Shown here piece after piece: positions 1-21,913 of a stretch of DNA of 31,202 bases. This DNA is from Macrostomum lignano (taxonomy: Eukaryota), in NCBI GenBank assembly GCA_002269645.1, contig NIVC01004926.1, positions 1 to 31,202 on the forward strand, given 5' to 3'. Below the pieces are notes generated by a model. That model made no database searches. It saw nothing but the letters and a program-made list of their open reading frames with translations, and was not told the DNA's origin. Made by a program: the position numbers and the translations under genes. How positions within the stretch are numbered: position 1 is the first letter of the stretch; each line of letters opens with the position of its first letter.

Positions 1-3000
1 CACTTATAACTCTACCAAAGATCGTTTTAGAAGAGTCAGATGTACACTAGATGATACTGATTCTGAAATAGTCTATAGGAGAACTGCAGACACATCTGAT
101 GCTCGCTTGCCGACGAGCTTTGAGCTTGAAGATTTTTGCTTAGCAATCTAGTTGCTGAGGAAGATGCCAGTAAACTGCTGATGACGTGTTGAAGTGGCTG
201 CTAACACGGCGCGATCATTCGGGATCATGCAGTAGGACGAGTGGCCAGTTCTGGTTCGATGGCCACCTTCCAATTGGCTGCTCGATTGTAAGGATCATCG
301 CTCCATGCGCAAACAGAGCATAGAGAGCTCGATGAGCAGTCAATTAAATGTGTCGACGAAGTAGCTATAGTAATTATTTTCAGAGAAAATGCATCATGCG
401 TCATCATACTTCCACTCTATTAACATTATAAAGGCTCATTGCTCCATCTCAAAACTTTTACTTCTAAGAGACGGAGGTAGTTTTTTGTTGCACCCGAATA
501 TACAGTCTCACAGAGGCCGGAGTAAAGCTTCATGACCAAACATACGACGCATTTTAAGGCTTTTCAATGCATCGCTCCTGACGAAATTTTTTAATCTATG
601 GGGGCAGCAGAACCTTTTTGTACTCATTTGTTTATCGCATCAGTTGAAATAAAAGCATACCCAAATGAACGTTTCAATAATGCCAGCGAAGGCTGCCTAC
701 GTTCAGGCAATTGAGATGACACTAAAAATTTATACGCAAACTGCAAGCACATCGAGCGTTGGTTTTTTCCAGCGATCCAACCGCTAATAAAGCTGGCCGC
801 AAATCCTTGTTCAGACGCTGCATTAATAGGCATCACCAAAGCCGCATTAGGAATTAAACAATAAGAGACGAACGACTATTAGAATCGATTGTTGCCTTCC
901 AATTAGCGGCTCGATTGAATGGATAATCGCTCCACGAGCAGAGCATAGGCGAATTGACGAGCAATTAATCGAAGAGGCAAGACATGTCACTATAACGCAA
1001 TAAAACAAGTACAAACGTACCTATAGCAAAAATGAAAAAGCAGCATACACAAGGACTCGTTGCTCAAAGAAACTCTACTGTAAAAAGCTCACTTTTACCT
1101 GACAGGTTTTAGACCTTACCCATATGAACGCTTTAACAGAGCCAGATGCATTCTAGTCATTGGCGAACCAATAAACTTGTACGCAAACTGAACACACATC
1201 TGCTGCTCTGGCAAACCGGATTCTTTCGTTTTGGTTATCCAATTACTAAGAAAGCTACCGCTGTGAGTAGTGTCTTCTGTAGCTACTGGTCTATTTGGAA
1301 TCAAGCAATAGGACGCGCTTCTACCACCGCTACGAACGCTGGGATCGATTGCGGCCTTCCAATTGGCTGCCCGATTAAAAGGTGAATCGCTCCAAGTGCA
1401 AAAAGTAGGCGAGGTCGATGAGCAATCAATTGAGACGGCTATAAGAGGGCATTTACGAGTTCTAGATGCTTTACAGATACTAATTAAACTTGATGCATTT
1501 TTTATGAAGCTAAAAATTGATTAATAAGACTCGTTGCTCCAATTTAATCCCAAAACATACCCAAATGTACGCTTTAACAAAGCCAGTTGCAATCCAGGCT
1601 TGGATATTACTGGCTCTGCTAGAACAAACTTGTAATTGAATTGCAGACACATTGGATTCTGTCTTGACTCTTCAGCGACAATCCAGCCACTAAGAAAGCT
1701 TCCAGTGTAAGCCTGTGCAGAAGAGCTACGTGATGACGTCATCGCTTGAGACCTAATCTTATTTGGAACGAGGCAATAGGAAGCAGAGCGACTATTGGAG
1801 TCAATTGCGACCTTCCAGTTGGCAGCTCGATTGAATTGACCGTCGCTCCATGTGCAAACATTTGGCAATTTTGAGGAGCAGTCAACCGAAACGCAGTGGG
1901 TAACTTATTTGAAAAAAGACATAAAAAACGGTTACAATTTCAGCTACCACAGGTGTGCTATCAAATTCAATAAACTTGGCAAGGCTCGCCTAAAGAAGCG
2001 GGAATAAACATGATGCAAAAACTCCTACCCAGAGACGCGTTTTAGCAGAACCAGTTTTGCCGCGCTGGCACTAGAAGAATGGAACGAATCCTTCACTCTA
2101 AATGCAAACTGAAGACACAATTGACCAGCACTAGGGTCTGATCCTGTCGTCCCTCCAGATACCCAAGCGCTATGAAATTCAGCAACTAGACTGACAGAAC
2201 TCCTGCCAGATGACATTGGACGCCTGATAGGAACCAAACAGTAAGACGAGAGTGCTGCGCGGCTAAAGCCAGGCGGCTCCAGCGTCATTTTCCAAGCGCC
2301 GTCTTTGTTGTCAAGATCGTTTCGCCAAGCACAGATTGCCGAAGTGCTCGAAGAACAAGCAAGACGTTCGTCAGCCATTTTAGAAGCTGAATTCATGTTC
2401 AGGCAAGCCTTACAAGATGAATTTTAAAGTACAAGCAATAACTAATGGCAAAGCTCATTGCTCCAAAGTAAACTAAAATAAATGGTTAACTGAATTTCTT
2501 TTACCCCCAGTTTCGCTTGAGCAAACTCAGCGACACCTCCCGCGGCGCCGTCAAGTAGCTGAACGTGAGGCAAACAGATGGCGACAACTGCTGCTCATTA
2601 TCAGATTTAGTGGCAGCAATCCAGTGACTCTCAAAGCGACCAGTCACTAAACTGTGCGGCTGAGGTCCGCTCTGAACCAAGCACAGGTGCGATCTGCCGC
2701 TGCCTAACGAGGACGCGTCGCTTGCAGCATCCAGGGCGGACACCCAGTGGGCGCCTTTATTGTCGAAATCATCACGCCAACTGCAGTGACCGCCAGCGTG
2801 GCAGGACAACTGTTCAAGCGTCGCTGAGGTGGAAAAACAGTCTAGCAGTTAAATAATTAGACATGCATCTCTTACAATATTTAAGCCAAAATTCCAAGGA
2901 CACTAACTGAAATTTTATGACAAAAACTCGTTGCTCCAGTTATTTCACGTTTTTTGCATTATTTTTATAGCCAACTCATACCCTCTGCTCCGTTTCAGCA

Positions 3001-6000
3001 AGCTTAATCCAGCTCCAGCAACAGTTGTCTCTTTACGAGTAGCCATCGGTTGATCAATTCGATAGGCAAACTGAAGACACATATCACCACGTCTGCCAGT
3101 AAGCCATTGGCTAACAAACCGAGCTACGGTTAAGGGTCGTGAGCTAGAGTAGCTAGAACCCGACAAAACGCTTGGCTCCGGCACTAGACATCGCGGTGAC
3201 TGAAATGCAGCCGACGGATGCAAGGAGGCGCGCCAATGAGCGTCAATATTATCCTGATCGTCGCGCCAAGTGCAAGGGCTAGCTGACGTACTTATGCACG
3301 TTAACTCGGGTACTGACACTGCAGCTAATGTACCGGCTAAAATTGATTTTCCGAAAGAGTCAATGTAGTCGTTAAAAATCTATTATAAACAGAAACTTTA
3401 GACAAGGCTCGTTGCATCAAATCAAATTAACTAAATATATCTTGACGGTTCAAGCATCGCTAAAATCATAAATCATACCCTAAACTGCGCTTTAATAGAT
3501 TCAATTTAGCTCGACCAGCAGTCCAGTAGACAAACTGAAGACACATCTGACCGCTAACTTTAGAAAATACCGTCGGACTGACAAATTGACCGCCTGCATC
3601 GCTACCAACAGAAGATGACGACACCGACTGAGGTACAAGACACAGGCCAGTGTTACCACCAGCAACTGCACCAACGTCTGCCAAGGTCCAGTGCAGACGA
3701 TTGAAAACGTCGTTGAGCCAGGCACAGTGACCTCGAGCTGTGCACTGCAGATCTATTTTAGTTGCTGCAAGAGAGCCATCTAATGTATAACCTGGACTAT
3801 ATAATTATCAGTTTATAAAGAAACTGCAAGCTAGTCAAGGCTCGTTGCTCGTGTTTGTTCGAACAAGTTTAAAATAACAGTAAGTAATCATGCAGCATCA
3901 TAACTAAGAGTACAAAAGAAACCAGCGCCATACCCTCGATTCCGTCGAAGCAGGTGCAGATCCGCACCACTAAACTCATCATCCTGCTGACTGATCAGAT
4001 AGCGAAAGTGCAAACAGCCCACTTTGCTGTCAGTAACAAAGCGGCTAACAAAACGAGCCTTAGTTACACGTTTAAGCGCCGACACATCTCTAATTAGGCA
4101 ATAGTGCGTTTGAAAGCGAGAACTCTCAGTAACAGTAGCCAACTGCCAGTGGGCGTCAGTATTGTAACTGTCATCTAGCCAATAGCAGCGGGATCCACTA
4201 TCGCAGTGCAATTGTTTTACAGCTTCATCAGATTGACCGGTAACTAGATTATTTTTCAAGCCATTATTTTACTAAATTATCAACAAAGAGTTTTGGTCAA
4301 TCAAGGTTTCGTTGCTCCATCCTATTCGAAAAAAAATTAAAGGGGAATCCTGTGCAATTTACCCAGAGTGACGTTTAAGCAACTGGAGCGATGGAGCTGA
4401 GGCTGCAGGTACCAACTGATACACAAACTGCAAGCAGGCGGACTCAATCGGTTCGGAGAGAAATAAGCTGACAAATCTAGCCGAAATTAAGGTCGCAGCC
4501 GTGACGCTAGGATTTATTGGAACCATGCAGAAAGCTGATCGGTGTAACGGAGAGGCTGGCGAAGACTGCACAGCAGCCAGCTTCCAGTGCGCTTTTGTAT
4601 TGTAGCCATTGTCATCGCTCCATAGACATGTATCAGCGCCATTGCTTTGACATTGCAAAGCTTTAATGTCAAAGCCACTAAATCTGCTGTTTGATAAACC
4701 AAAGGCTGAAATACAGTGAAAGCAGCAATCAATCACTGTAAAATCGTGTAACTGCTGAACTCCCAATTCTGACTAATTTTCTACAAGGCTCGTTGCAACA
4801 GGACATTAATAATGACTAATTATATAGCTATAATATTATTTTTCAATTCTCATACCCGGAATTGCGCTTCAACAATTGCAATTGACTCTGCCGATCAACT
4901 AGCTGGTAAGAGAACTGCATGCAGCCTTCGCTGACCGAACTGCTAGCAATGAATAGGCTAACAAATCTAGCCGATACAAGCTGTGCGCTAGTAGCACCGC
5001 CAGTGACAACTGCGCAATAACTGGTTCGATAAGTGGCAGCGGTGGCAGCGCTACCATCCGAATCGGCAATGCTAGCCAACTTCCAATGCGCCTCAGTATT
5101 ATAGCCGATATCGTTGAACCAATTACAAGATTGAGAACTACTGCCGAAACCGCTACCACTGCAGGTGAGCTGTTTAATAACCATTCGGTTAGCACTAAAC
5201 GACGAAGGTGAACTCGCTGCGCAATCGAAGCGTTGGTAATTATAAATAATTTTCTCAAGTTACCAGCCAAGCTAAGTACGAACACAATCAATTAAGCTAA
5301 GGCTCGTTGCTAAGCAAATGCAAAAAAACAGAACATAAATCAAAGCATTTTTCTAACCCCGACGATCGCCTTAGAAGAGCCAACACTGCGGCGGTATCGT
5401 CAACATCGCTTTTCCGTCGTTCTGGTCCATAGTCGATACGATAACTAAACGACAAGCAGAGTCCATTGCTGCTATCGCGGCCGCTGCGCACCCAGTCGCT
5501 TAACAACCGACCAGACACAGCAACCGACGGTGAAGGAATCAATCCAGCTGTGCACCAACTATTCGTAATTGCAGATCCGGTTCTAACTTTAACTGACGAG
5601 GCAGGAGAACCAGCGTTCAGACTGCTATGAATAGCAAATCGACGCCATTCTAATTCCCGATTATAACCGTCGCTTGACCAGCGATCCGTTGATAGGGACT
5701 CTTCTTCCATTACACTAGCTCCAGTACTGACTGCAACTGCCTCCAACACTGCATAAAGCATATTAATAATTATAAGCAGTAGACTTTATGTAGGAAATCT
5801 CGGAGCAGACTCGCTGCTCCATAAACTTATACAAGGACTAATTGCGATATCACTAAAAAAACTAAGCCACAAGTCCTGTTAGAGGTGGTAATGTTATGTT
5901 TTAACAATGCATGTCGTCAGGGATGCTTTCCGAGAAAAAAGGTCAATTGACTAAGTGATTTCAATCGTTAGAAAGATGCACGAGTTTGTGCTGTTGGCAA

Positions 6001-6945
6001 GAGACGTTTTTCCCCTTGAGTTAATAAAAACCTAAACTTACCCGTGATTATTCTTCAATAAAGCCAGTTGAGGTAAGTCAGTTTCGATAGAAGACTTCGA
6101 TGAATCTCCTAATTGATTGTTAGGAGTTACGTGATAAGCAAACGACAAGCACTGAGCACTCTGACGCCTGAAATTGCTACTAGCAGAATCAATCCACCAG
6201 GGACTCTGCAGTCTGGCTGAGCCGCCGTGCAGACAGACAGCCTGAGTGTTGAACTCTGTCAGATAGCGAATCTGCCAAGCACTGCCCGGTTTCCAGGCTA
6301 AATCTACCCAGTTGCAGAACTGAGAATCAGTTTTTGACGAACTTCTACTAGCAGCAGAATGTTGCTGTTCAAAGTCGCACGAAACTGACACCGAATCGTC
6401 CAAAACAGCCAGTGAATTTTGCACCCCTAGAGTAGGCGCAATCGATGCACGCTAGAGCAACAATTTTTGCAAACACATTGATCATGTACGAGCGTATGAT
6501 ATGAAAGAATCTCGTTAACTCCTAATCGCATTATAATAACTTAAAGCTACTGATTTTAAATATAAATTCAAGCAAATTAATTAGATAATTAATTATCATA
6601 TTTAGTTTTATGTTACAATGAATCACAAATTCGTGAAAAAATATTAAGATAAGATTATGTCATGCGCATCTTAGCCCCATTCAAAAAATTTTAAAGACAA
6701 TATTTTTAAACTACTCAGGCAACTCATTCGAAAAAAATTATTTTATCATATTAGCCAATTTTTCAACTATATAGAGAATGGAGCAACGAGCCTTGCCAAA
6801 TATTGAATACTTTATTTAAAATCTTTCATGTTTTGATTGGGTAATTTTAATAAGCAACGAAAGCGTTGCACTTACCTGGTACACCGACGATAAGTACTAG
6901 GAGGCAGACGATTGCTCCCGACAATCGAGGAGTTAAAGCAGACAT
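1..6945 (-). CDS. 5' part of a secreted/cell-surface MAM-like domain gene: one signal-peptide exon plus a cluster of >=13 mutually exclusive variable exons; downstream constant exons lie beyond the left edge
   Basis: Repeated exon signature C-x(n)-C-x-W...W...CL...F/L-x-S-x-W/F...CL(Q/S)F-x-Y...L-x-LL(K/R)R-x-x-G|GT recurs 13 times at ~440-680 nt spacing. All have phase-1 AG acceptors; V1-V12 have phase-2 GT donors. V1 reads CDFE...CNW...ARLQSPW...CLSFAY, matching the N-terminal part of the MAM consensus. Confidence 0.85.
16..364 (-). pseudogene. Variable exon V13, disrupted (>=3 frameshifts and TAG at the conserved Trp)
   Basis: Acceptor ttactatag|CT; IDC...VCAWSDDPYNRAANWKVAI, then SYCMIP, FLSN* (TAG 150-148), MCLQFSY and LTLLKRS with frame slips between blocks; GT donor at 15-14. 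Confidence 0.7.
431..447 (-). promoter_or_regulatory. Selector for V13
   Basis: Plus aaggctcattgctccat: 17 pairs, one G.U. Confidence 0.8.
661..989 (-). pseudogene. Variable exon V12, two apparent 1-nt deletions (pseudo-exon or consensus error)
   Basis: Acceptor ttgcgttatag|TG, donor GG|gtatgc; 329 nt (3n+2). The frame homologous to V10/V11 slips near 955 and near 870; restoring 2 nt gives 3n+1. Confidence 0.7.
1050..1065 (-). promoter_or_regulatory. Selector for V12
   Basis: Plus caaggactcgttgctc: 15 pairs, one bulged nt. Confidence 0.78.
1120..1438 (-). CDS. Variable exon V11
   Basis: Acceptor ccctcttatag|CC, donor GG|gtaagg, 319 nt = 3n+1; IDCSSTSPTFCTWSDSPFNRAANWKAAI...SYCLIP...GSFLSNW...MCVQFAY...LALLKRSYG. 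Confidence 0.85.
1526..1541 (-). promoter_or_regulatory. Selector for V11
   Basis: Plus aagactcgttgctcca: 16 pairs, one G.U. Confidence 0.8.
1561..1903 (-). CDS. Variable exon V10
   Basis: Acceptor cttttttcaaataag|TT (AAG, less common), donor GG|gtatgt, 343 nt = 3n+1; VDCSSKLPNVCTWSDGQFNRAANWKVAI...SYCLVP...GSFLSGW...MCLQFNY...LALLKRTFG. Confidence 0.82.
1976..1988 (-). promoter_or_regulatory. Selector for V10
   Basis: Plus ttggcaaggctcg: 13/13 to the 5' half of the docking site. Confidence 0.78.
2029..2386 (-). CDS. Variable exon V9
   Basis: Acceptor atgaattcag|CT, donor GG|gtagga, 358 nt = 3n+1; LAC...ICAWRNDLDNKDGAWK...SYCLVP...AEFHSAW...LCLQFAF...LVLLKRVSG. Confidence 0.82.
2446..2465 (-). 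promoter_or_regulatory. Selector for V9
   Basis: Plus tggcaaagctcattgctcca: 20 pairs, two G.U. Confidence 0.8.
2505..2823 (-). CDS. Variable exon V8
   Basis: Acceptor tttttccacctcag|CG (in-phase alternative start 2841), donor GG|gtaaaa, 319 nt = 3n+1; LSCHAGGHCSWRDDFDNKGAHW...LCLV...GRFESHW...VCLTFSY...LSLLKRNWG. Confidence 0.85.
2923..2938 (-). promoter_or_regulatory. Selector for V8
   Basis: Plus aaaactcgttgctcca: 16 pairs, two G.U. Confidence 0.78.
2982..3336 (-). CDS. Variable exon V7
   Basis: Acceptor tcaattttag|CC (in-phase alternative starts at 3324 and 3318), donor GG|gtatga, 355 nt = 3n+1; LTC...PCTWRDDQDNIDAHW...RCLVP...ARFVSQW...MCLQFAY...LSLLKRSRG. Confidence 0.85.
3403..3415 (-). 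promoter_or_regulatory. Selector for V7
   Basis: Plus caaggctcgttgc: 13/13. Confidence 0.8.
3479..3779 (-). CDS. Variable exon V6
   Basis: Acceptor ttatacattag|AT, donor GG|gtatga, 301 nt = 3n+1; LQCTARGHCAWLNDVFNRLHW...GLCLVP...GQFVSP...MCLQFVY...LNLLKRSLG. Confidence 0.85.
3836..3850 (-). promoter_or_regulatory. Selector for V6
   Basis: Plus caaggctcgttgctc: 15/15. Confidence 0.8.
3934..4243 (-). CDS. Variable exon V5
   Basis: Acceptor aataatctag|TT, donor GG|gtatgg, 310 nt = 3n+1; LHCDSGSRCYWLDDSYNTDAHWQLA...HYCL...ARFVSRF...CLHFRY...LHLLRRNRG. Confidence 0.85.
4302..4320 (-). promoter_or_regulatory. Selector for V5
   Basis: Plus caaggtttcgttgctccat: 12/12 core plus caagg, with one mismatch and one bulge. 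Confidence 0.78.
4363..4705 (-). CDS. Variable exon V4
   Basis: Acceptor tgtatttcag|CC, donor GG|gtaaat, 343 nt = 3n+1; LQC...TCLWSDDNGYNTKAHWKLA...AFCMVP...ARFVSLF...CLQFVY...LQLLKRHSG. Confidence 0.88.
4784..4796 (-). promoter_or_regulatory. Selector for V4
   Basis: Plus caaggctcgttgc: 13/13. Confidence 0.8.
4856..5216 (-). CDS. Variable exon V3
   Basis: Acceptor ttgcgcag|CG, donor GG|gtatga, 361 nt = 3n+1; QLTC...SCNWFNDIGYNTEAHWKLA...SYC...ARFVSLF...CMQFSY...LQLLKRNSG. Confidence 0.85.
5299..5311 (-). promoter_or_regulatory. Selector for V3
   Basis: Plus aaggctcgttgct: 13/13. Confidence 0.8.
5358..5748 (-). CDS. Variable exon V2 (lacks the first two Cys)
   Basis: Acceptor ctttatgcag|TG, donor GG|gttaga, 391 nt = 3n+1; RWSSDGYNRELEW...NSWC...GRLLSDW...LCLSFSY...LALLRRSSG. 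Confidence 0.8.
5808..5822 (-). promoter_or_regulatory. Selector for V2
   Basis: Plus gactcgctgctccat: 15 pairs with docking, two of them wobble. Confidence 0.75.
6042..6426 (-). CDS. Variable exon V1 (most canonical MAM-like)
   Basis: Acceptor ctactctag|GG (phase 1), donor GG|gtaagt (phase 2), 385 nt = 3n+1; VQNSLAVLDDSVSVSCDFE...CNW...AVCLHGGSARLQSPW...CLSFAY...LALLKNNHG. Confidence 0.85.
6511..6522 (-). promoter_or_regulatory. Selector for V1 (weak)
   Basis: Plus ctcgttaactcc vs docking ctcgttg-ctcc: one G.U pair plus one bulge; ~85 nt upstream of the V1 acceptor. Confidence 0.5.
6778..6799 (-). promoter_or_regulatory. Putative docking site (transcript: UUGGCAAGGCUCGUUGCUCCAU), ~76 nt downstream of the constitutive exon donor
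   Basis: Plus strand atggagcaacgagccttgccaa is the only full copy I found in this orientation and is the reverse complement of the motif repeated once in each variant-exon intron. Confidence 0.8.
6876..6945 (-). CDS. Constitutive first coding exon: signal peptide MSALTPRLSGAIVCLLVLIVGVP(G)
   Basis: ATG at 6945-6943; 23 codons plus 1 nt; basic residue then hydrophobic core; consensus donor CCAG|GTAAGT at 6875 (phase 1), matching the phase of all variant acceptors. Too short for the ORF track. Confidence 0.85.
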
Positions 6946-7864
6946 CTCGGGTGTTTACTAGTCGATTTTTTAGAACAATTTTTTAATTATTTGCAGATAA
7001 TTTGCTTGAAGAGCATGAAGTTTTGTACCGGTAGTTTGGTAAGATTTATGACTATGATATTAATATAACTGGTGGTATATGATATAATGATCTAAACTAT
7101 TTATCATAATGACAGATGTATTGCAAATACAGCGCTAGCGCTGAGGCAATTCTATCATCCACAAGAGTAGACCTTGTTTGCTATAATAAAAATTAAATAA
7201 ATTTATCAAAAACACAAAGAGCAATACGTCGAGATAAAATTTCTTTCATTGTATTTTTTGAACAGAAAATATAATTAGAAAAATTCTATCAATTAATTCA
7301 AGCATACAATGGGGCGCAATAAGATACAGCAATTTGCACTGCATAGTAATCTATGAAAAATAATGAAAACATTATAGATGCTAAAACGTGGTATTAAGCA
7401 CGGCTTAGCACTTTACGCTAAAAAATCCTCGAAAAAAATATTTCAATATTGAAATCAGTGACAGTCATCTAAAGCAATCAATTAGTTGTTGCATATATAA
7501 ACTATATTTACGAATATCTGTAAAATATTATTGAAAAATTCACAAAAAATGAAAGCACCGGATGTGTGTTAATGAGACAAAGTTAACTATTTTTTAATTA
7601 AAATAATCAAATCTTTAATAAATTATCTCAGCAATATTCTGCAAGGCGTGTTTTTTCGATGTAAAGAGCTACAAAGCTGGTTGTAACTGTTTTTAGCACC
7701 ATGCAATTTTTTTGTAGAACTCTTTAGCCCTTTACAGAACTCTGTAACAATTTGTAGAATTCTGTAGCTCTTTGTAGCAGATTAATCTTTAATTAATAAT
7801 GGAATCTTTAACAATTTATCTTAGATCTATCTATCGATGGTCGATAAAAACTTAACAGTCAGAA

Positions 7865-10800
7865 TTATTTTTGAAGATCCACAACATTCTGCAAGGCGTA
7901 TTTCAGCTTCTCAACGGCCAACAGGCAGTCCTGACGGGTCAGATCGTTGTGAGTGAGCAATCTAATGATGGTCTCAGAGACGGCGGGAGCTCGTAAACGA
8001 ATCTTGCAGGAGTCGGTTGGCTGGAGAAAATGAAACAGGATTCGATGTGAATTATTAGTTCTGGAGCTGGTGGTTGGTGCTGGATTTCGTGCTTGTGGAA
8101 TTCACACCCGGATGTACATGTCTGATGGGGATTAGGAAGTTATTAAAAGGCCGTTGTACAACCCTGTGTGAGTGTGTGTATGATGAAGCTCCATGCAGCC
8201 CTCGTAGGAGTATATATATTATTCTTATCATCAATATAGAAGCCCTGGAATATGTAAATTTTAGAATTAAGAAAGTGATTTGGGGTAGAATATTAACATA
8301 ACGATCTTTGAAACAAACTAATTAAGATAGTAACTAATATAATATAATAAACGAGTTAACTATTTCGACATACAACAGGCGTGTGTGTAGGTTATGAGGA
8401 GACAAAAAAGTTCAACCCAATTACTCTCCAGACTGCAGTGCAATGATGCCTATACAGTAAACTAGAGATCATCAAGGACTACTGAAAAGAAACTAATTAA
8501 TAATTAAACATATCTGTTTAAACAGTCTACCGATTAAGAGATCAAAGCTTTTTAAGACTGGCTTACCTCTTCAATAATAGTCTGCAGTTGGTCGATACTT
8601 ATTGGAGCATCCTTAGTAAGTTTAATTTGCATTACATTGGTCTGCGGCTTCTCAAACACCAGCCAGTCGGGTAGGTTGACCTGAGACACACCTGTGCGGA
8701 ATGAGATTGAGAAAAACTTTATTGCATTTTGACCACAATAACACATATAACTAGGTTTGGAAGTATCCTATAGCTCTTTGTGTCACTCTGTAGCACTTTG
8801 TAGCCTTCTATAGCTCTTTGTAGCATTCTTTAGCTCTGCGTAGCCTTCTGTAGCTCTTTGTAGCATTCTTTAGCTTTTTGCAGCACTCTGTAGCTCTTTG
8901 TAGCACTCTGTACTTCTTTGTGGTATCCTGTGGATTTTGTAGCACTCTGTAGCTCTTTGTATCACTCTGTAGCTCTTTTTAGCACCCTGTAGCTCCGTGT
9001 AGCACTCTGCACCCTGTAGCTCTGTGTAGCACTCTGCACCCTGTAGCTCTGTGTAGCACTCTGCACCCTGTAGCTCTGTGTAGCACTCTGCACTCTGTAG
9101 CTCTGTGTAGCACTCTGCACCCTGTAGCTCTGTGTAGCACTCTGCACCCTGTAGCTCTGTGTAGCACTCTGCACTGTAGCTCCGTGTAGCACTCTGCACT
9201 CTGTAGCTCCGTGTAGCACTCTGCACTCTGTAGCTCCGTGTAGCACTCTGCACCCTGTAGCTCCGTGTAGCACTCTGCACTCTGTAGCTCTGTGTAGCAC
9301 TCTGCACCCTGTAGCTCTGTGTAGCACTCTGCACTCTGTAGCTCCGTGTAGCACTCTGCACCCTGTAGCTCCGTGTAGCACTCTGCACTCTGTAGCTCCG
9401 TGTAGCACTCTGCACTCTGTAGCTCTGTGTAGCACTCTGCACCCTGTAGCTCTGTGTAGCACTCTGCACTCTGTAGCTCCGTGTAGCACTCTGCACCCTG
9501 TAGCTCCGTGTAGCACTCTGCACTCTGTAGCTCCGTGTAGCACTCTGCACCCTGTAGCTCTGTGTAGCACTCTGCACCCTGTAGCTCTGTGTAGCACTTT
9601 GCACTCTGTAGCTCTGTGTAGTACTCTGCACCCTGTAGCTCTGTGTAGCACTTTGCACTCTGTAGCTCTGTGTGGCACCCTGTAGCTCTTTGTAGCACTC
9701 TGCACTCTGTAGCTCTTTGTAGCACACTGTAGCTCTTTGTAGCACTCTTTAACTCTTTGTAAAACCACGTGGCTCTTTGTAACAAATACAACTCTTTGTA
9801 ACATTTTGTAGCTCTTTGTAGCACTCCAGCTCTTTGTAGAACCCAATAGCACTTTTTGGAATTCTGTAGCTCTGTGTAGCATCATGTGGCCCTCATCTTT
9901 TCTACCAAAATGACTATCATTTTTAATTGCCTTAAAATTCTTTTTGACTAAACTAAAAGTGAATAAAAATTGGCACAATTTCCAACTAACCTGAATAGAT
10001 CAGCTGGGCATTGGCGTGATCAGCTGACAGGGTGTCCTTGGCTACGTCCAGCGAATAGCTGGCCGCAGCGGCCAAAAGTCCAGGCTGTCTGGCGGCGCCG
10101 CCGAGCGCTTTGCGAATTCGACGGCAACTGAAATTATTTTGACAGGCGCCAAAAATTTAGAACAAGAAACTACTAAGTTATTTTTAACTCCGTACTCAGG
10201 CTTGATGGATTTAATTTTGAACTTTTCCGACTCATGCCAGCTTGGAATTACAATTCTGAGAGTTATTCAGTGTACACGTAGAGTACATAGACAGCACTTA
10301 CTAACTAATAGTATCAGCATCCGATGCGATGCAGGACCCGACGGGTGCGCCGAGACCCTGGAAAAAAACAGAGAAATGAATTCATGCAGAAAAACTGCTA
10401 GGAATTCTTAGTTGCATCTACGAGATCAGGGGGCGGCGAATTCTAACCCGCGAAGCCTCTCTATTCGGCGCTCGGGTCTTTTGAAACTTCACAATAGCAA
10501 TCCGACCCGCTCAAGGCTTGGCTCTTCTCAGCTCCCTTCTCTCATCTTTTTTCTCTCTCGTCTCCTCTCTTCTCTCCTCTCTCCTCTCTTCTCTCCTCTC
10601 TCCTTTCTTCTCTTCTCTCTTTTGTCTCTCCTCTCCTCTCACCCCTCTTTTCTTTCTCGTCTCGTCTCTTCTCTTCCCTCTTTGTCTCCTCTCCTCTCTT
10701 CTCTCCCCTCTTTTTCTCTCTCTCTCCTCTCCTCTCTTCTCTCCCCTCTTTATTCTCTCTCGTCTCCTCTCTTCTCTTCCCTCTTTTTCTCTCTCCTCTC

Positions 10801-12870
10801 CTCTCTTCTCTCCCCTCTCCTCTCTTCTCTTCCCTCTTTTGTCTCTCCTCTCCTCTCTCCCCTCTTTTTCTTTCTCGTCTCTTCTCTTCCCTCTTTGTCT
10901 CCTCTTTTCTCTTTTCTCCCCTCTTTTTCTCTCTCTCTTCTCTCCCCTCTTTTTCTCTCTCGTCTCCTCTCTTCTCTCTCCTCTCCTCTCTTCCCTCTTT
11001 TGTCTCTCCTCTCCTCTCTTCTCTCCCCTCTTTTTCTCTCTCGTCTCCTCTCTTCTCTCTCCTCTCCTCTCTTCTCTCCCCTCTTTTTCTCTCTCGTCTC
11101 CTCTCTTCTCTCTCCTCTCCTCTCTTCTCTCTCCTCTCCTCTCTTCTCTTCCCTCTTTTCTCTCTCCTCTCCTCTCTTCTCTCTCGTCTCCTCTCTTCTC
11201 TCTCCTCTCCTCTCTTCTCTCCCCGCTTTTTTTCTCTCGTCTCCGCTCTTCTCTCCCCTCTTTTTCTCTCTCGTCTCCTCTCTTCTCTTCCCTCTTTTTC
11301 TCTCTCGTCTCCTCTCTTCTCTCTCCTCTCCTCTCTTCTCTCCCCTCTTTTTCTCTCTCTCTTCTCTCCTCTCTTCTCTCCCCTCTTTTTCTCTCTCTCT
11401 TCTCTCCTCTCTTCGCTCCCCTCTTTCTCTCTCTCGTCTCCTCTCTTCTCTCTCCTCTCCTCTCTTCTCTTCCCTCTTTTGTCTCTCCTCTCCTCTCTCC
11501 CCTCTTTTCTTTCTCGTCTCTTCTCTTCCCTCTTTGTCTCCTCTCCTCTCTCCTCTCTTCTCTCCCCTTTTTTCTCTCTCTCTTCTCTCCTCTCTTCTCT
11601 CCCCTCTTTTTTCTCTCTCGTCTCCTCTCTTCTCTCCCCTCTTTTTCTCTCTCCTCTCCTCTCTTCTTTTCCCTCTTTTGTCTCTCCTCTCCTCTCTCCC
11701 CTCTTTTCTTTCTCGTCTCTTCTCTTCCCTCTTTGTCTCCTCTCCTCTCTCCTCTCTTCTCTCCCCTTTTTTCTCTCTCTCTTCTCTCCTCTCTTCTCTC
11801 CCCTCTTTTTTCTCTCTCGTCTCCTCTTTTCTCTTCCCTTTTTTGTCTCTCCTCTCCTCTCTCCCCTCTTTTCTTTCTCGTCTCTTCTCTTCCCTTTTTT
11901 GTCTCTCCTCTCCTCTCTCCCCTCTTTTCTTTCTCGTCTCTTCTCTTCCCTCTTTGTCTCTTCTCTCCTCTCTTCTCTCTCCTCTCTTCTCTCTCCTCTC
12001 TTCTCTCTCCTCTCTTCTATCTCCTCTCTTCTCTCCCCTCTTTTCTTTCTCGTCTCTTCTCTTCCCTCTTTGTCTCTTCTCTCCTCTCTTCTCTTTCCTC
12101 TCTTCTCTCTCCTCTCTTCGATCTCCTCTCTTCTCTCCCCTCTTTCCTCTCTTCTCTCCCCTCTTTCTATCTCCTCTCTTTCTCCCTTCTCTTCCCTCTC
12201 TCCTCTTCTCCCCTCTTTCATCCTCTATTCTCTCTTACATAGCCCGAAGCTATATGTAAAAGAAACCAGCTTGCCAACCCCTGAACTATATCCTCAGATT
12301 CTCACCTTTGAGAAACAAATAGTCACTGAACTGACATATCTGCCATACTCAATAGGGTCGATACCCAAAGCCACGGCTGCATTGATCAGTCTGGCTCCAT
12401 CAACGTGCAGCTTCATGCCGTACCTGTTGCAGAGCTCTCTGGCCTGCGGATGTCGGAGTGCATAGGGAAATTTATTGCATAGGAGCGATAGCGGACAGGC
12501 AGACATTGGCTAGAGGAGGGAAGAGCCAGTTTAGCAGTAAACGCGTCTCTAACTCTCACGCTACGACCCCTACCCTGGTTCCACTCCGTGTGAGGCCACA
12601 TCATTTGGGGCTTGTGGTGCACAAAAATTGTTATTGTATGTGCTGTTCAGCCATTCACGCCCATGAGGGCCAGCCACCAAAACCTGACAATTTAAAATAC
12701 AAATGTGGGACCCCTGTACACCCAGTGTGAGCGTATGTGAGTGCTTGCCTGCGTAAAGTATTCATGTCTTGTATGGATTGACAATAAAATTGATAATTGA
12801 CTAAAACATATAGACAGACAGAAAACTAAGACTTTGTTACAGACAGACTCCCAGAGAGTTAATTACAGAA

Positions 12871-12921
<51 letters not shown>

Positions 12922-12985
12922 AAACTAAGACTTTGTTACAGACAGACTCCCAGAGAGTTAATTACAGAAAGACAGACAGACAGAA

Positions 12986-13036
<51 letters not shown>

Positions 13037-15135
13037 AAGACAGACAGACAGAAAGACAGACAGACAGAAAGACAGACAGACAGACAGACAGAAAGACAGA
13101 CAGACAGACAGACAGTCAGACAGACAGACAGACAGGAAGACAGACAGAAAGACAGACAGACAGACAGACAGACAGAAAGACAGACAGACAGACAGACAGT
13201 CAGACAGACAGACAGACAGGAAGACAGACAGACAGACAGGAAGACAGACAGACAGACAGACAAACAGACAAAGACACCGATACGCATCCCCTCACCTCGG
13301 CAAAGTAAGCCACGGGAAGCACTTTGCCACCGGCCAGTCCGTGCGTGTTCTCCAGGCACAGCGCCCTGGTGATTGGATAGTGCGGGTCCTCCGCATTGGT
13401 GCGGATCAGGCGCCGGCACTGCTCCAGGCAGAGGGTGCCGTTAGGATTGGTGCTGACCGCCCTGTGGTGCGCGCCGGCGAATGAGGCCAAACTGCCCTAT
13501 GGAGAAAATGTTTATTTGTTTGTTATAAAAACATTGAGCTTCTATAAAGACCTGAGGAGACGACAAAATTGTTTCGAGACAAAGACCTCAAGCAGTGTCC
13601 TTAAGCGATGCAAGACTTTAATACAGGTAATCAAATGAGACAAAGACCTTAGTACAGGTAGGTTAGCGAGACAAGGGCCTCAATTCTGGAAGCAGAGCAA
13701 AAATAAAGACCTTAGCGATGAAAATAGAGTAAAACAAAGACCTAAATAATGGAAGATTAAGACTTCAAGTACTAAAAGTAGTGCAACACAAAGATCTTGG
13801 CACCGGAAGTATACTAGACATAGGCACCAATGGAAGTAGAGTGAACAAAGACCTCAGTACCGGAAGTAGTGCAAAACAAAGACCTTAGCACTAGAAGTAC
13901 TGTAAGACAAAGACAGCAATGGAAGTAAAGTAGACAAAGACCTCAGTACTGGAAGTAGTACAACATAATGAACTTATCAATGGAAGTGGAGTAGACAAAG
14001 ACCTTAGCACCGAAAGTAGTGCAAAACAAAGACCTTAGCAATGGAAGTAGAGTAGTCGAGTAGACAAAGAGGTAAGTACTCGAGATTAGAGCAAGACAAA
14101 TATCTTTGTCAGGCTAGTAAAATATCAAATCCATACATTTTTGCATGTATATATACAGCTATTCAAGCAGTTCAAATAGTTAATAGAATACCTGTTCGTA
14201 TAGATGAATATGACACAGATCGCCCAAGATAACTTCTGAACCTCGCTCCCTACAGTGCGACATCACGGGCAGTAAGTTGCCCATAGTGCCGCTAGTGACA
14301 AATAGTCCAGCTTCTTGGCCAAGCATTTTAGCGACTCGCGACTCCAGTTCTGTTCATTTTTTAGAAATAAAATTAGACATGTAAGCACATTAGTTTATCT
14401 TCTAAAAGCGCTGAAGTTGCTTCGAAAACAGTGGAGGCCCTGAACTAAAAGTGACATCCCTGACACTAAAAGTAGGTCTCTCGCACTAAAAGCGGGGTCT
14501 CTAACATTAAAACTGGCGTCTCTGACACTAAAAGTGGAATCCTTGACATTAAAACTGGCGTCTTCTCTGACACTAAAATGGGCATCTCTGAGCTCTGACA
14601 CTAAAAGTGGCGTCTTCTCTGACACTAAAAGTGGCGTCTTCTCTGACACTAAAAGTGGCATCTCTGACACTAAAAGTGGCGTCTTCTCTGACACTAAAAG
14701 TGGCGTCTTCTCTGACACTAAAAGTGGCATCTCTGACACTAAAATGGGCATCTCTGACACTAAAATGACGTCTTTTCTGACACTAAAACTAAAAGTGGCT
14801 TAAAAGCACAGGATTTGCACTAATAAATACACATGCCAGAAAAACTCACCCATCACAGTGGTATTCTCGCCAAACACATCGTCTCCATAGCTAACTGATT
14901 CAATCATTGCTTTCATCATACCTGGTGTTGGTTTGCTCAGCACATCGCTACGAAAATCTACTATTCTAGCTCCAGCATCGTCACTAATGCTGGTTTGCCT
15001 GTGCTTTTGTTTTTCTCCACTATTGTATTGATAGCTAAGCAATCGCTTAGCAAAAGAAATTAAGCAAGCTGGTGTTACACTGGGTGCATTTAGATGGGTA
15101 ATTGTCTGACTAAAAAATGTGACTGCCTTTAGCAT
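7865..15135 (-). CDS. THA1: Low-specificity L-threonine aldolase (PLP-dependent, GLY1/LtaE family), 8 exons, 418 aa
   Basis: Exons 15135-14850, 14349-14192, 13496-13296, 12443-12306, 10357-10302, 10127-9991, 8691-8567 and 8020-7865 join in phase with GT-AG sites (1257 nt). Family motifs: [37 protein letters not shown]|GLGAPVG (PLP Lys), RKALGG..RQ, IRLLTH. Confidence 0.93.
8770..9870. repeat. Minisatellite, 27-nt unit GTAGCACTCTGCAC(C/T)CTGTAGCTC(T/C)GT with 20-nt variant flanks (aldolase intron 6)
   Basis: Direct tandem periodicity; 9-aa repeats in ORF track; degenerate related copies near 7700-7780. Confidence 0.95.
10427..12283. mobile_element. Non-autonomous hAT-like DNA element (copy 1) containing ~1.7 kb CT-rich simple repeat
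   Basis: Ends CAGGGGGCGGCGAA...GCTTGCCAACCCCTG are imperfect TIRs; first ~100 nt align with the element at 30876; CAGGGG-type TIRs are typical of hAT/Charlie-like elements. Confidence 0.7.
12810..13272. repeat. (GACA)n microsatellite with an embedded duplicated spacer block
   Basis: Direct; block AAAACTAAGACTTTGTTACAGACAGACTCCCAGAGAGTTAATTACAG present twice. Confidence 0.95.
13570..14100. repeat. Degenerate ~30-35 nt tandem repeat (ACAAAGACCT...GGAAGTAG)
   Basis: Recurrent ACAAAGACC and GGAAGTAG cores. Confidence 0.8.
14440..14797. repeat. Minisatellite, 21/24-nt units TCTGACACTAAAAGTGGC(GTCTTC/ATC)
   Basis: Direct tandem periodicity. Confidence 0.92.
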
Positions 15136-15894
15136 AATGGCTATTGTTAGCTGCAATGAGATTATGGAATATCCATTGGAAAATTTGTCTAAAAAGTAGA
15201 AAAATCACAGACAATTAACCAGATAGCATCTGGTCATTTAGAAGGTTCTTGTACTTTTAATAAACTATAATTAGCTAGAATAGATAAAAATCATGTTATA
15301 TTTGTCCAACAAAATAGTCACCCCTGTGTGTAATAATAGCCTGCCAATGAGTTACAGGTCACTCTTTATAAGTGGCAGTTTTAGTTGCATACTATAGACT
15401 GCAATTAGTTCAGCTTAAAGCCAATACTCAGCTTAAAGCCAACAACTATAGTTTTGGGATGGGGATTATTCATAAGAATTGATTTCATCAACCTAAACTT
15501 AACCCAACCAAATGGTCAATAGCCAACCATTAGGGCATGGTCAATGGGTGGTTTCAGGATATAAAGATTTTTATAATGATTGCTTTTATCAACCCTAACT
15601 TTAAACAAGGCATGGAAACCTACTCAAAATTAGAATAAATAATAATTCTAGCCCATAATATATATAAATAAAGCTTGAATTTAAAACCAGCCATATAAAA
15701 CCTAGATAAAGAATAAAATTATGATCTTATCAAAGCTAAAACTAATTTAAAACTGCAACTATAAATAACTAATTTTACTTTTTTTTGAGAAAATTATTAT
15801 ATATAAAATATGTCCTGGGCAATATAATGCTGTGTATACTGGGGAGCCAGATTTTTTAAATGTATATTACACAATGATGCATGGTTAAAGGCCC

Positions 15895-21837: not shown

Positions 21838-21913
<76 letters not shown>

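What the first reader, a model, noticed from the sequence alone, without database searches (positions are those of the whole stretch)
1..6945. Dscam-style mutually exclusive exon array diversifying the N-terminus of a MAM-like secreted/surface protein
Seen: one signal-peptide exon followed by 13 tandem paralogous 301-391 nt exons, each with its own acceptor, donor and intronic motif complementary to one upstream site. Established: Dscam1 exon clusters encode parts of Ig domains chosen one per mRNA, and MAM domains mediate adhesion (e.g. homophilic binding in RPTPmu/kappa). Inference: this locus makes >=11 isoforms whose mature N-terminus is a variable MAM part, a candidate cell-identity, self/non-self or immune recognition system. 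I do not know of a described MAM gene with this architecture but cannot run the search.
Basis: partly seen in the sequence, partly recalled or inferred. Interest (0 to 1): 0.96.

Follow-up and report, generated by a model that had tools for sequence, protein, structure and literature searches.

The report
Flatworm MAM receptor with alternative-exon arrays
The window holds the front part of a flatworm (Macrostomum lignano) gene that seems to build the single MAM domain of a membrane protein from one of 14 and one of about 18 interchangeable exons. Each exon array carries RNA-pairing signals like those of insect Dscam1, and the same exon arrays occur in blood flukes, tapeworms and monogeneans, apparently undescribed.

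Summary
The window is the whole contig NIVC01004926.1 of Macrostomum lignano. On its minus strand lie a signal-peptide exon (6945-6876) and 13 tandem paralogous exons. Each of the 12 introns between those exons holds one motif, TGGAGCAACGAGCCTTG. It is complementary to a single site 80 nt after exon 1 (0/200 shuffles reach the observed pairing in every intron).

A 98.5% identical copy on a 349-kb contig shows what the cut contig hides:
- a 14th exon of this kind;
- a second array of about 18 shorter exons with its own, different docking and selector pair;
- a constant exon, a transmembrane helix and a cytoplasmic tail.

The exon phases mean that only one exon from each array keeps the reading frame. 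The RNA-seq-based protein PAA93052.1 joins exon1-V1-W3-constant. It passes Pfam's MAM threshold, and its model matches solved MAM domains (meprin, neuropilin-1, PTPRK).

Arrays of the first exon type occur in trematodes, cestodes and monogeneans. Schistosoma japonicum has 14 exons of the first type and 18 of the second. I found no paper describing this.

Not shown here: use of the other exons, that the RNA pairing causes exon choice, and the function. The selector system was not established in Schistosoma.

The parts
6876..6945 (-). Exon 1. It holds the start codon and the signal peptide (MSALTPRLSGAIVCLLVLIVGVP). It is 70 nt long and ends in phase 1, with donor CCAG|gtaagt.
   Evidence: It is identical in position to the first exon of PAA93052.1 on the homeologous contig.
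6772..6803 (-). Docking site 1 (core GGCAAGGCTCGTTGCTCC, 6795-6780). It lies about 80 nt downstream of the exon 1 donor and about 345 nt upstream of V1.
   Evidence: In an unbiased scan of the equivalent intron of L003 it is the single optimum: median duplex energy -32.0 kcal/mol against a background of -11.9.
6042..6426 (-). V1, 385 nt. It has no selector upstream. It is the V exon used in the annotated transcript-based protein.
5799..5828 (-). Selector for V2 (ATGGAGCAGCGAGTCTGCTCC), 50 nt upstream of the V2 acceptor.
   Evidence: dG -33.9 kcal/mol, 0/200 shuffles.
5358..5748 (-). V2, 391 nt.
5290..5312 (-). Selector for V3.
   Evidence: dG -27.1, 0/200.
4856..5216 (-). V3, 361 nt.
   Evidence: Pfam MAM 23.7 bits, profile 4-93.
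4778..4801 (-). Selector for V4.
   Evidence: dG -28.4, 0/200.
4363..4705 (-). V4, 343 nt.
4291..4324 (-). Selector for V5.
   Evidence: dG -34.1, 0/200.
3934..4243 (-). V5, 310 nt.
3830..3851 (-). Selector for V6.
   Evidence: dG -32.3, 0/200.
3479..3791 (-). V6, 313 nt (301 or 286 nt with alternative in-phase acceptors).
3400..3424 (-). Selector for V7.
   Evidence: dG -30.8, 0/200.
2982..3336 (-). V7, 355 nt.
2917..2939 (-). Selector for V8.
   Evidence: dG -30.8, 0/200.
2505..2823 (-). V8, 319 nt.
2445..2466 (-). Selector for V9 (the strongest, TTGGAGCAATGAGCTTTGCCAT).
   Evidence: dG -38.0, z -8.3, 0/200.
2029..2386 (-). V9, 358 nt.
1973..1995 (-). Selector for V10 (core GGCGAGCCTTGCCAAGTT).
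   Evidence: dG -34.0, 0/200. The reported duplex spans 2026-1973; the core is at its 3' end.
1561..1903 (-). V10, 343 nt.
1520..1552 (-). Selector for V11.
   Evidence: dG -29.8, 0/200.
1120..1438 (-). V11, 319 nt.
1048..1078 (-). Selector for V12.
   Evidence: dG -30.5, 0/200.
661..989 (-). V12. The frame is broken in this contig by two 1-nt deletions. The exon is intact (331 nt) on the homeologous contig.
419..451 (-). Selector for V13.
   Evidence: dG -35.6, 0/200.
17..364 (-). V13. The frame is broken by six indel events, including a 2-nt deletion at the donor. The exon is intact (349 nt) on the homeologous contig. The contig ends 16 nt further on.

Best explanation
What it is. The window carries the 5' part of a Macrostomum lignano gene for a single-pass type I membrane protein. 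Its only recognisable extracellular domain is one MAM domain.

How the domain is put together. It is assembled from three parts:
- one of 14 alternative 'V' exons, about 100-130 residues, covering MAM profile positions 1 to about 93;
- one of about 16-19 alternative 'W' exons, about 50-65 residues, ending ...DFK;
- one constant exon holding the last two strands.
A last exon then encodes the transmembrane helix and the cytoplasmic tail. Exon 1 is 70 nt, and every intact V and W exon is 1 mod 3. So exactly one V and one W are needed for an open frame, which allows up to about 220-270 isoforms.

How the choice is proposed to work. It would follow the Dscam1 exon-6 scheme, used twice. A docking site lies just downstream of the preceding exon or array. 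It can pair with only one of the selectors, which sit 40-90 nt upstream of each variable exon except the first. That pairing would loop out the exons in between and bring the chosen acceptor next to the upstream donor. V1 and W1 have no selector and would be the default.

Shown here:
- the exon arrays, their phases and their splice sites;
- the MAM fold;
- the membrane topology, read from the sequence;
- the two specific complementarity systems;
- one transcript-based isoform (exon1-V1-W3-constant);
- conservation of V arrays in Neodermata, and of both arrays in Schistosoma japonicum.

Inferred:
- that the pairing forms and causes exon choice;
- that the other variable exons are used;
- how variable exons downstream of the chosen one are kept out (a repressor, or nonsense-mediated decay of mRNAs with two such exons);
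- the function. I propose isoform-specific recognition at the cell surface, either homophilic as for the RPTPmu MAM domain or directed at a ligand.
For: Source and array.
- The window is the whole contig NIVC01004926.1 of GCA_002269645.1, M. lignano.
- Array, phases and donors.

Selectors and docking sites.
- The motif occurs 9 times against 0.22 expected.
- 12 of 12 introns between V exons have a partner that 0/200 shuffles reach. The intron before V1 has none.
- The selector is the only conserved block in those introns.
- On the homeologous locus L003, 13 of 13 introns between V exons behave the same way.
- In 11 of the 17 introns between the 18 listed W exons, the docking-site duplex is reached by 0/60 shuffles. 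In the other six it is reached by 1-6 of 60. Overall z runs from -1.6 to -8.4.
- Each docking site is the unique optimum of its intron: -32.0 and -30.6 kcal/mol against backgrounds of -11.9 and -10.6.
- Each is specific to its own array: cross-pairing gives only -14.6 and -17.3.

Gene structure.
- All 14 V exons are open on L003.
- 18 W exons are listed: 15 open with length 1 mod 3, two with broken frames (W6, W8) and one with an in-frame stop (W13).
- The constant exons were located.
- PAA93052.1 is signal + V1 + W3 + constant + transmembrane helix + tail. The Mlig_3_7 annotation behind it was built from RNA-seq with StringTie, TACO and TransDecoder (PMC5730564).

MAM identity.
- Pfam.
- AlphaFold model with pLDDT 79.2 and pTM 0.77.
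- The top Foldseek hits in the PDB search are meprin beta 4gwm (E 1.7e-8), meprin alpha, LAST-MAM, NRP1 MAM 5l73 and SR-C MAM 8yt7; PTPRK 8a1f is at rank 32.

Conservation.
- Predicted proteins that are strings of V-like segments occur in Paragonimus, Schistosoma, Opisthorchis, Spirometra, Dibothriocephalus, Hymenolepis, Hydatigera, Cichlidogyrus and Protopolystoma.
- S. haematobium has 13 tandem V exons in the 34-kb locus fetched, all ending GG|gt.
- S. japonicum has 14 V and 18 W-like units.
- The S. mansoni and S. japonicum models each contain one V and one W, and use different ones.
Against: - Only one M. lignano isoform is on record, and it uses V1, the exon without a selector. TACO was run with --isoform-frac 0.75, which would drop minor isoforms, so this neither supports nor excludes use of the others.
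- No junction reads or long reads were available here.
- The RNA pairing is computational only. The cluster-2 selectors are degenerate: the 21-nt consensus with 3 mismatches finds only the docking site.
- The pairing model does not by itself explain why variable exons downstream of the chosen one are skipped.
- In Schistosoma I could not establish a docking and selector system, so the mechanism may not be conserved with the arrays.
- Between the two M. lignano copies, V1-V11 differ by 11 nonsynonymous and 4 synonymous changes. That is too few to show constraint.
- V12 and V13 are broken in this contig.
Confidence: 0.75

Rival explanations
1. Constitutive gene with relic duplicates. Only V1 (and W3) are real exons. 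The other copies are decaying exon duplicates that are never spliced in, and the conserved intron motif is left over from duplication.
For: - The only transcript-based model uses V1 and W3.
- V12 and V13 are frame-broken in the window.
- Three of the 18 W copies on L003 are broken: W6 and W8 by frame shifts, W13 by an in-frame stop.
- Changes between the two gene copies in V1-V11 are mostly nonsynonymous, 11 against 4.
Against: - All 14 V exons are open on L003, with intact AG and GT sites and an invariant Cys/Trp core, although they share only 22-28% identity. Unused exons that old would not stay open.
- The rest of each intron has diverged beyond alignment, while a roughly 16-nt selector is kept at a fixed distance from each acceptor.
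- The motif's reverse complement exists once, at the expected place.
- The arrays persist in trematodes, cestodes and monogeneans.
- The S. mansoni and S. japonicum models use exons other than the first.
Confidence: 0.1
2. Real alternative exons, chosen by proteins rather than RNA pairing. The conserved intron motif would be a binding site for a splicing regulator, and its complementarity to the upstream site would have no role.
For: - No experiment shows the duplex.
- Selector-like sequences also occur inside some V exons (TGGAGCGAYGA, the W-S-D-D codons).
- No convincing pairing system was found in Schistosoma, although the arrays are there.
Against: - A protein site would not need a single inverted copy in the intron just before the array.
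- Two arrays use two unrelated sequence pairs with the same geometry: docking site about 340 nt before the first variant, and selectors 40-90 nt before the others.
- Each docking site pairs only with its own array.
- Selectors pair with differing, overlapping parts of docking site 2. This is the pattern I recall for Dscam1 exon 6, from my own knowledge and not read here.
Confidence: 0.1
3. Independent 5' ends. Each V exon would start its own mRNA, either from its own promoter (as in clustered protocadherins, UGT1A or chelicerate sDscam) or by spliced-leader trans-splicing onto its acceptor. Exon 1 would serve only V1.
For: - M. lignano trans-splices about 39% of its genes, and this gene is 'g2' of a transcriptional unit shared with threonine aldolase.
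- Every V exon has a good acceptor.
Against: - V exons have no conserved ATG and no hydrophobic signal sequence.
- All their acceptors are in phase 1, matching the exon 1 donor.
- There is one signal exon and one docking site next to it.
- Such an mRNA would encode a MAM-transmembrane protein with no signal peptide.
- The W array lies inside the gene, so alternative 5' ends cannot explain it.
Confidence: 0.04

Closest known systems
Dscam1 exon 6 cluster of insects and crustaceans (docking site and selector, competing RNA structures; e.g. PMC3535345, PMC8791459, PMC12962786)
   Same: - A tandem array of paralogous exons, each encoding part of one extracellular domain.
- One docking site in the intron after the preceding exon.
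- One selector upstream of each variant, complementary to the docking site.
- More than one variable cluster per gene, which gives combinatorial isoforms of a single-pass membrane protein.
   Different: - The domain is MAM, not Ig, and there are no Ig or FN3 domains.
- The phylum is Platyhelminthes, not Arthropoda.
- Both clusters divide one and the same domain (about 60% and about 25% of it).
- The first exon of each cluster lacks a selector.
- Exon lengths are 1 mod 3, so the reading frame itself enforces one exon per cluster.
- The repertoire is hundreds of isoforms, not tens of thousands.
- Splicing choice and function are untested.
MAM domains of RPTPmu/kappa, meprins, neuropilins (Pfam PF00629)
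   Same: - Sequence match above the Pfam threshold for the spliced protein.
- A beta-sandwich model whose best structural matches are solved MAM domains.
- An extracellular position next to the membrane.
- MAM mediates homophilic binding in RPTPmu (Zondag et al. 1995, as listed in the references of PMC9258826).
   Different: - MAM is the only recognisable extracellular domain here.
- The family is divergent: V exons alone stay below threshold, and almost no canonical MAM domains align to the family profile over its full length.
- I know of no described MAM gene with alternative exon arrays, and I found none.
Other mutually exclusive exon clusters controlled by RNA structure (Drosophila 14-3-3zeta, Mhc, MRP; mammalian ATE1; PMC4691838, PMC7797038) and the model for their origin by tandem duplication (PMC6071210)
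   Same: - Competing base-pairing between one site and several alternatives.
- Origin by tandem duplication of an exon together with one arm of a stem. Docking site 2 even looks like the 3' end of a W exon plus its donor.
   Different: Those clusters have 2 to about 10 exons and mostly tune enzymes or channels. Here there are two clusters of 14 and about 18 exons in a surface receptor.
Clustered protocadherins and chelicerate sDscam (alternative first exons with their own promoters)
   Same: A variable extracellular region joined to a constant transmembrane or cytoplasmic region, with tens to hundreds of isoforms.
   Different: The variable exons here are internal. They lack a start codon and a signal peptide, and share a single upstream signal exon.

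Membership tests
MAM domain (Pfam PF00629) | Match to the Pfam profile above the gathering score | tested here: met
   - PAA93052.1 scores 32.3 bits against a cut-off of 26.4.
- The S. mansoni counterpart scores 44.6 bits over profile positions 1-158.
- Five of the six window V exons tested score 11.6-23.7 bits over profile positions 1-93; V2 has no hit. This is the sub-threshold result expected for part of a domain.
MAM domain (Pfam PF00629) | Beta-sandwich fold like that of solved MAM domains | tested here: met
   - AlphaFold2 with a 33-row alignment gives pLDDT 79.2 and pTM 0.77.
- The 12 best Foldseek matches in the PDB are all MAM-containing structures: meprin beta and alpha, LAST-MAM, NRP1 MAM (TM 0.63 over the target) and SR-C MAM. 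PTPRK is at rank 32.
- The model covers the copy on L003, not the window's own copy.
MAM domain (Pfam PF00629) | Mediates homophilic or oligomerising contacts | not testable with these tools
   This needs binding or cell-aggregation assays.
Mutually exclusive splicing by docking site and selectors (Dscam1 exon 6 type) | Tandem paralogous exons with the same phases and their own splice sites | tested here: met
   window; L003.
Mutually exclusive splicing by docking site and selectors (Dscam1 exon 6 type) | A single docking site between the upstream exon and the array | tested here: met
   It is the unique optimum in an unbiased scan of the intron, for both arrays. The window site is at 6803-6772.
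Mutually exclusive splicing by docking site and selectors (Dscam1 exon 6 type) | A selector complementary to the docking site upstream of every variable exon | tested here: met
   Twelve of 12 selectors (V2-V13) in the window, 0/200 shuffles each. Thirteen of 13 on L003. Eleven of the 17 introns between W exons are reached by 0/60 shuffles and six by 1-6 of 60. Exception: V1 and W1, the first exon of each array, have none.
Mutually exclusive splicing by docking site and selectors (Dscam1 exon 6 type) | Exactly one variable exon of the cluster in each mRNA | tested here: inconclusive
   - The frame arithmetic requires it (70 nt, then 1 mod 3, then 1 mod 3).
- One RNA-seq-based model has one V and one W.
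- The S. mansoni and S. japonicum models have one of each.
- No read-level data were available.
Mutually exclusive splicing by docking site and selectors (Dscam1 exon 6 type) | The pairing is needed for exon choice (disruption and compensatory mutations) | not testable with these tools
   This needs minigenes or genome editing.
Dscam / Ig-superfamily receptors | Ig and FN3 domains in the ectodomain | tested here: not met
   Pfam finds only MAM. The resemblance to Dscam lies in gene architecture, not in descent.
Protocadherin- or UGT1A-type variable first exons | Each variable exon has its own start codon and signal peptide (and promoter) | tested here: not met
   No conserved ATG or hydrophobic leader in the V exons. 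All acceptors are in phase 1, matching exon 1. Promoters were not tested.

The most novel reading that the evidence does not exclude
Flatworms, including schistosomes, liver and lung flukes, tapeworms and monogeneans, would share an ancient hypervariable surface receptor. Its single MAM domain would be assembled combinatorially from two arrays of mutually exclusive exons (about 14 x 18). In Macrostomum the choice would be made by two docking and selector RNA-pairing systems that arose independently of arthropod Dscam1. It would be the flatworm counterpart of Dscam or protocadherin diversity, serving cell identity, self/non-self or immune recognition and, in parasites, possibly contact with the host. 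Genome annotation has hidden it by breaking it up or concatenating its exons.
Probability: 0.45. Interest if true: 0.92.

Novelty: new variant of a known kind. Interest (0 to 1): 0.88.

Why it matters
Exon arrays governed by a docking site and selectors, producing hundreds or more receptor isoforms, are known essentially from arthropod Dscam1. A second, unrelated case in another superphylum and on a different protein fold would matter in several ways.

- It would show that this RNA-based choice mechanism evolved more than once.
- It would offer a small system (two clusters, introns of about 120 nt) in Macrostomum lignano, a flatworm for which transgenesis has been reported (PMC5730564).
- It would bear on how animals without hypervariable Dscam or clustered protocadherins diversify their cell surfaces.

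There is also a practical point. The same V arrays exist in human-parasitic flukes and tapeworms, and both arrays in S. japonicum. Current annotations there split them into fragments or fuse them into false multi-domain proteins. One example is a 1941-residue S. curassoni model made of concatenated V segments. A variable surface protein of these parasites has therefore probably been overlooked.

Tried and rejected
1. Word-indexed protein search with the V alignment found nothing. The same index did not return the M. lignano threonine aldolase either. It seems to miss this species' proteins, so the plan to walk along the contig through that neighbouring gene failed. The exhaustive profile search then found PAA93052.1 and the flatworm relatives.

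2. AlphaFold on the single sequence gave pLDDT 42 and was unusable. An alignment of exact sub-sequences worked.

3. I tried to enrich the alignment with canonical MAM domains from the multi-MAM hits. Only one aligned over the full length.

4. Docking site and selectors in Schistosoma were not established.
- A scan of the 11-kb first intron of S. haematobium gave only G-rich, promiscuous windows.
- A candidate site (GATGCCAAGCCGCTCC, L004 15897) pairs with CGGCTTGG-type motifs 42-91 nt upstream of only 4-5 of 12 acceptors.
- That motif is absent from S. japonicum.
- A scan of the S. japonicum W array timed out.
- The inverted-repeat tool returned only (TA)n microsatellites.

5. The UniProt models A0A1I8GW98, A0A1I8J1G4 and A0A1I8GP08 join several V exons. 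I considered them as evidence for tandem inclusion and rejected them. They are chimeras that also fuse threonine aldolase (and, in one, BUD13), and they use internal pseudo-acceptors to keep the frame.

6. Eight of the ten allowed literature searches were run. Seven looked for a description of this gene and found none; the eighth identified the assembly.
Full report
**Source.** The 261-residue ORF at 27595-28380 is found on two contigs of GCA_002269645.1. One of them, NIVC01004926.1, is exactly 31,202 bp long, so the window is that whole contig. Accession NIVC00000000 is the Mlig_3_7 assembly of the free-living flatworm Macrostomum lignano (PMC5730564). The second contig, NIVC01000034.1 (348,882 bp), carries a 98.5-99% identical copy of the region. 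That paper reports extensive duplication in this assembly.

**The observation.** The gene lies on the minus strand.
- Exon 1 (6945-6876, 70 nt) encodes MSALTPRLSGAIVCLLVLIVGVP and ends CCAG|gtaagt.
- Thirteen paralogous exons follow.
- V1-V12 end ...LL(K/R)(R/N)xxG with a GG|GT donor; V13's donor is damaged.
- Each has an in-phase AG acceptor that gives a length of 310-391 nt.
- The length is 1 mod 3 for V1-V11 in the window and for all 14 exons on the homeologous copy.
- The 11 intact peptides share 22-28% identity with V1, yet keep invariant Trp, Cys, Ser, Phe, Leu and Gly positions.

The intron after exon 1 contains GGCAAGGCTCGTTGCTCC (6795-6780).
- Its complement, GGAGCAACGAGCCTTG, occurs 9 times in the window with up to 3 mismatches, against 0.22 expected. 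Eight copies are on the gene strand in introns between V exons. The ninth is the docking site read on the other strand.
- Scored intron by intron with RNAduplex, all 12 introns between V exons hold a partner of -27 to -38 kcal/mol, reached by 0 of 200 dinucleotide shuffles.
- The intron between the docking site and V1 holds none: -19.9 kcal/mol, reached by 18 of 200 shuffles.
- In an alignment of the 120 nt upstream of the 12 acceptors, this motif is the only conserved block.
- The motif lies 38-93 nt from the next acceptor but 1-213 nt from the previous donor. It therefore belongs to the downstream exon, and V1 has none.

**What the cut contig hides.** The word-indexed protein search found nothing. 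An exhaustive profile search with the 11 V peptides returned 140 proteins. One of them is PAA93052.1 / UniProt A0A267H677, 'MAM domain-containing protein' BOX15_Mlig029915g2, 422 residues. Its parts are:
- the signal exon;
- V1;
- SCSQLK...DTDFK;
- LIFEGTIPANNPNARICVDNITAYHRPCHQ;
- a hydrophobic helix (VFIFIGALAFALIIAVSIFAI);
- a 150-residue tail.

Its locus, L003, is NIVC01000034.1:47318-83323, and the gene spans 16 kb. Window 1-7803 aligns to L003 16919-9146. On L003:
- all 14 V exons are open, including V12, V13 and a V14 that lies beyond the window's end;
- a second tandem array starts 680 nt after V14;
- 18 'W' exons of 148-237 nt were listed between 18082 and 23903, and a further partial one ends at 25153;
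- each W exon begins with one base followed by S-C codons and ends GA(C/T)TTCAAG|gt (DFK);
- 15 are open and 1 mod 3, two have broken frames and one has an in-frame stop;
- PAA93052.1 uses the third, 18688-18847;
- a constant exon (25248-25335) and the last exon (25440-26006) follow.

The frame arithmetic is 70 + (3n+1) + (3m+1). Only one V plus one W keeps the frame; none or two of either breaks it.

**A second pairing system.** The intron between V14 and W1 contains TTTGGCAGCGGGGAAGACTTCAAGGTACCTTGCACC (L003 17705-17750). The 17 introns between the 18 W exons contain sequences related to its complement, for example TGAAGTCTTCCC.GCTGCCAAA.
- 16 of the 17 lie 42-84 nt upstream of the next acceptor; the last lies 172 nt upstream.
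- Their z-scores run from -1.6 to -8.4. In 11 of the 17 introns, 0 of 60 shuffles reach the observed duplex.
- The flanking introns score near 0.

An unbiased scan of 30-nt windows across each upstream intron was run against the 130 nt before every acceptor of the array.
- The two docking sites come out as the single optima: median -32.0 and -30.6 kcal/mol, against background medians of -11.9 and -10.6.
- Cross-pairing is weak: docking site 1 against the W introns gives -14.6, and docking site 2 against the V introns gives -17.3.

So two arrays, two unrelated sequence pairs and one geometry. I take this as an internal replicate that makes a chance or relic explanation unlikely.

**Transcript evidence.** The Mlig_3_7 gene models were derived from RNA-seq with StringTie, TACO (run with --isoform-frac 0.75) and TransDecoder. 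PAA93052.1 therefore reflects an assembled transcript in which V2-V14 and all W exons but one are skipped. The TACO setting would discard minor isoforms. The name 'g2' places the gene in one transcriptional unit with threonine aldolase ('g1'). In the window that neighbour lies at about 15.1-8.5 kb on the minus strand.

**MAM identity.**
- Five of the six V exons tested match Pfam MAM positions 1-93 below threshold; V2 has no hit.
- The spliced protein passes the threshold, at 32.3 bits against 26.4.
- The S. mansoni counterpart A0A5K4F7P9 matches profile 1-158 over residues 34-212, at 44.6 bits.
- A model built from a 33-row alignment of exact sub-sequences reached pLDDT 79.2 and pTM 0.77.
- Its best PDB matches are meprin beta (4gwm, E 1.7e-8), meprin alpha, LAST-MAM, the neuropilin-1 MAM domain (5l73) and SR-C MAM (8yt7); PTPRK MAM-Ig-FN1 (8a1f) is at rank 32.
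- In the model, V supplies about six strands, W four and the constant exon two.

**Conservation.** The best hits of the profile search are flatworm proteins made of several V-like segments in a row, each ending LL(R/K)xxxG.
- Trematodes: Paragonimus (4 species), Schistosoma (several species), Heterobilharzia, Trichobilharzia and Opisthorchis.
- Cestodes: Spirometra, Dibothriocephalus, Hymenolepis and Hydatigera.
- Monogeneans: Cichlidogyrus and Protopolystoma.

I read these as gene-model artefacts over V arrays.
- In the 34-kb S. haematobium locus there are 13 tandem V exons, all ending GG|gt, behind a signal exon 11 kb upstream.
- The 76-kb S. japonicum locus has 14 V exons and then 18 W-like units ending D(Y/F)K|gt.
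- Paragonimus models contain W-like segments after the V segments.
- The S. mansoni and S. japonicum models each have signal-V-W-constant-transmembrane-tail. The constant exon is nearly identical to that of Macrostomum (LILEGTIPAGYPDARICVDNITSY). The two models use different V and W exons.

The V arrays therefore predate the split between Macrostomorpha and Neodermata. The two-array layout is shown directly only for M. lignano and S. japonicum.

I could not establish a docking and selector system in Schistosoma.

**Mechanism.**
- *Shown:* the arrays, the phases, the complementarities, one isoform and the fold.
- *Proposed:* the docking site next to the upstream donor pairs with one selector and loops out the exons in between, so that the chosen acceptor is used. 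Without pairing, the nearest exon (V1 or W1) is used.
- *Open:* how variable exons downstream of the chosen one are excluded. In Dscam1 exon 6 a repressor does this (my own knowledge, not read here). In this gene, nonsense-mediated decay of out-of-frame double inclusions could contribute.
- *Function:* inferred only. It rests on a membrane-anchored MAM domain whose first roughly 85% is variable, and on homophilic binding by the RPTPmu MAM domain, which I know only from a reference list.

**Rivals.**
- Relic duplicates are contradicted by open frames at 22-28% identity, by conserved selectors and by conservation across the phylum.
- Choice by proteins alone does not explain two single inverted copies at the right places.
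- Separate 5' ends are contradicted by the absence of start codons and signal peptides, and by the W array lying inside the gene.

**Novelty.** Seven full-text searches found no description of this gene. They combined MAM domain, mutually exclusive exons, docking and selector terms, Macrostomum, Schistosoma, flatworm, tapeworm and planarian. The library does not hold most subscription journals, so a prior description cannot be excluded.

**Caveats.**
- Everything beyond V13 comes from the homeologous contig, not from the window.
- V12 and V13 are broken in the window: two 1-nt deletions in V12, and six indel events in V13 including one at the donor. Errors at a contig end would look the same as real decay of this copy.
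- Between the two copies, exons differ at 22 of 4550 positions and introns at 28 of 2353. In V1-V11 there are 11 nonsynonymous and 4 synonymous changes, too few to interpret.

Noticed in passing
window 1-989, compared with L003 15929-16919: V12 and V13 carry mostly 1-nt indels only in this contig, within 1 kb of its end. V1-V11 differ from the other copy by substitutions and one in-frame 3-nt indel. This looks like long-read assembly error at a contig end, but real decay of this copy is not excluded.
   Followed up: partly
L003 17705-17750 (not in the window): Docking site 2 contains GACTTCAAG|GTACC, a copy of the 3' end of a W exon plus a 5' splice site. About half of the selectors (TGAAGTC...) could therefore also pair with the donor region of W exons, for example a local hairpin right after W1. 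This fits an origin of the docking site from a degenerate W exon, and it might mask donors.
   Followed up: partly
window about 4635, 1855, 1400, 940, 310 (minus strand, inside V4, V10, V11, V12, V13): The exonic motif TGGAGCGAYGA (codons for W-S-D-D) resembles the intronic selector. It pairs with docking site 1 at -22 to -28 kcal/mol, weaker than the true selectors. Its meaning is unknown.
   Followed up: no
window about 8500-15160, minus strand: The upstream neighbour is a threonine aldolase gene (Beta_elim_lyase; best database identity 52%). Its introns are filled with repeats: a 1.7-kb CT-only tract (10532-12236), a 27-nt minisatellite (8982-9682), (ACAG)n (12865-13270) and 21-24-nt repeats (14430-14788). 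It is 'g1' of the same transcriptional unit as the MAM gene on the homeologous contig.
   Followed up: partly
window 20285-24209 (+), 24237-26615, 27067-27566 and 27595-28380 (+): An MFS_1 transporter gene (519-residue model) with (AGAT)n and (TAGA)n introns and a 30-nt minisatellite. Then a 2.4-kb array of a 30-31-nt repeat, and a 32-nt repeat array. Then a single-exon 261-residue ORF with no Pfam hit, which ends in a hydrophobic stretch and is identical on both contigs.
   Followed up: no
database proteins P0121, P0264, P0265, P0268, P0270 and the adjacent short gene models of L004: Automated annotation mishandles this locus everywhere. The M. lignano UniProt models fuse threonine aldolase, several V exons and even BUD13. 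S. curassoni has a 1941-residue string of V segments. In S. haematobium each V exon is called as a separate small gene.
   Followed up: yes
L004 15897 (S. haematobium, first intron): GATGCCAAGCCGCTCC is complementary to CGGCTTGG-type motifs 42-91 nt upstream of 4-5 of the 12 V acceptors examined, the same position as in Macrostomum. One of them (TGGAGCGACTTGG) resembles the Macrostomum selector. The motif is absent from the S. japonicum locus, so this remains only a lead.
   Followed up: partly
L005 20100-60360 (S. japonicum): In most W-like units the open frame starts only at the ...LW... part. Three units carry the whole SC...C...LW...YK sequence in one frame. The unit may be split by an extra intron in schistosomes, which would complicate one-of-many exon choice there.
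   Followed up: no
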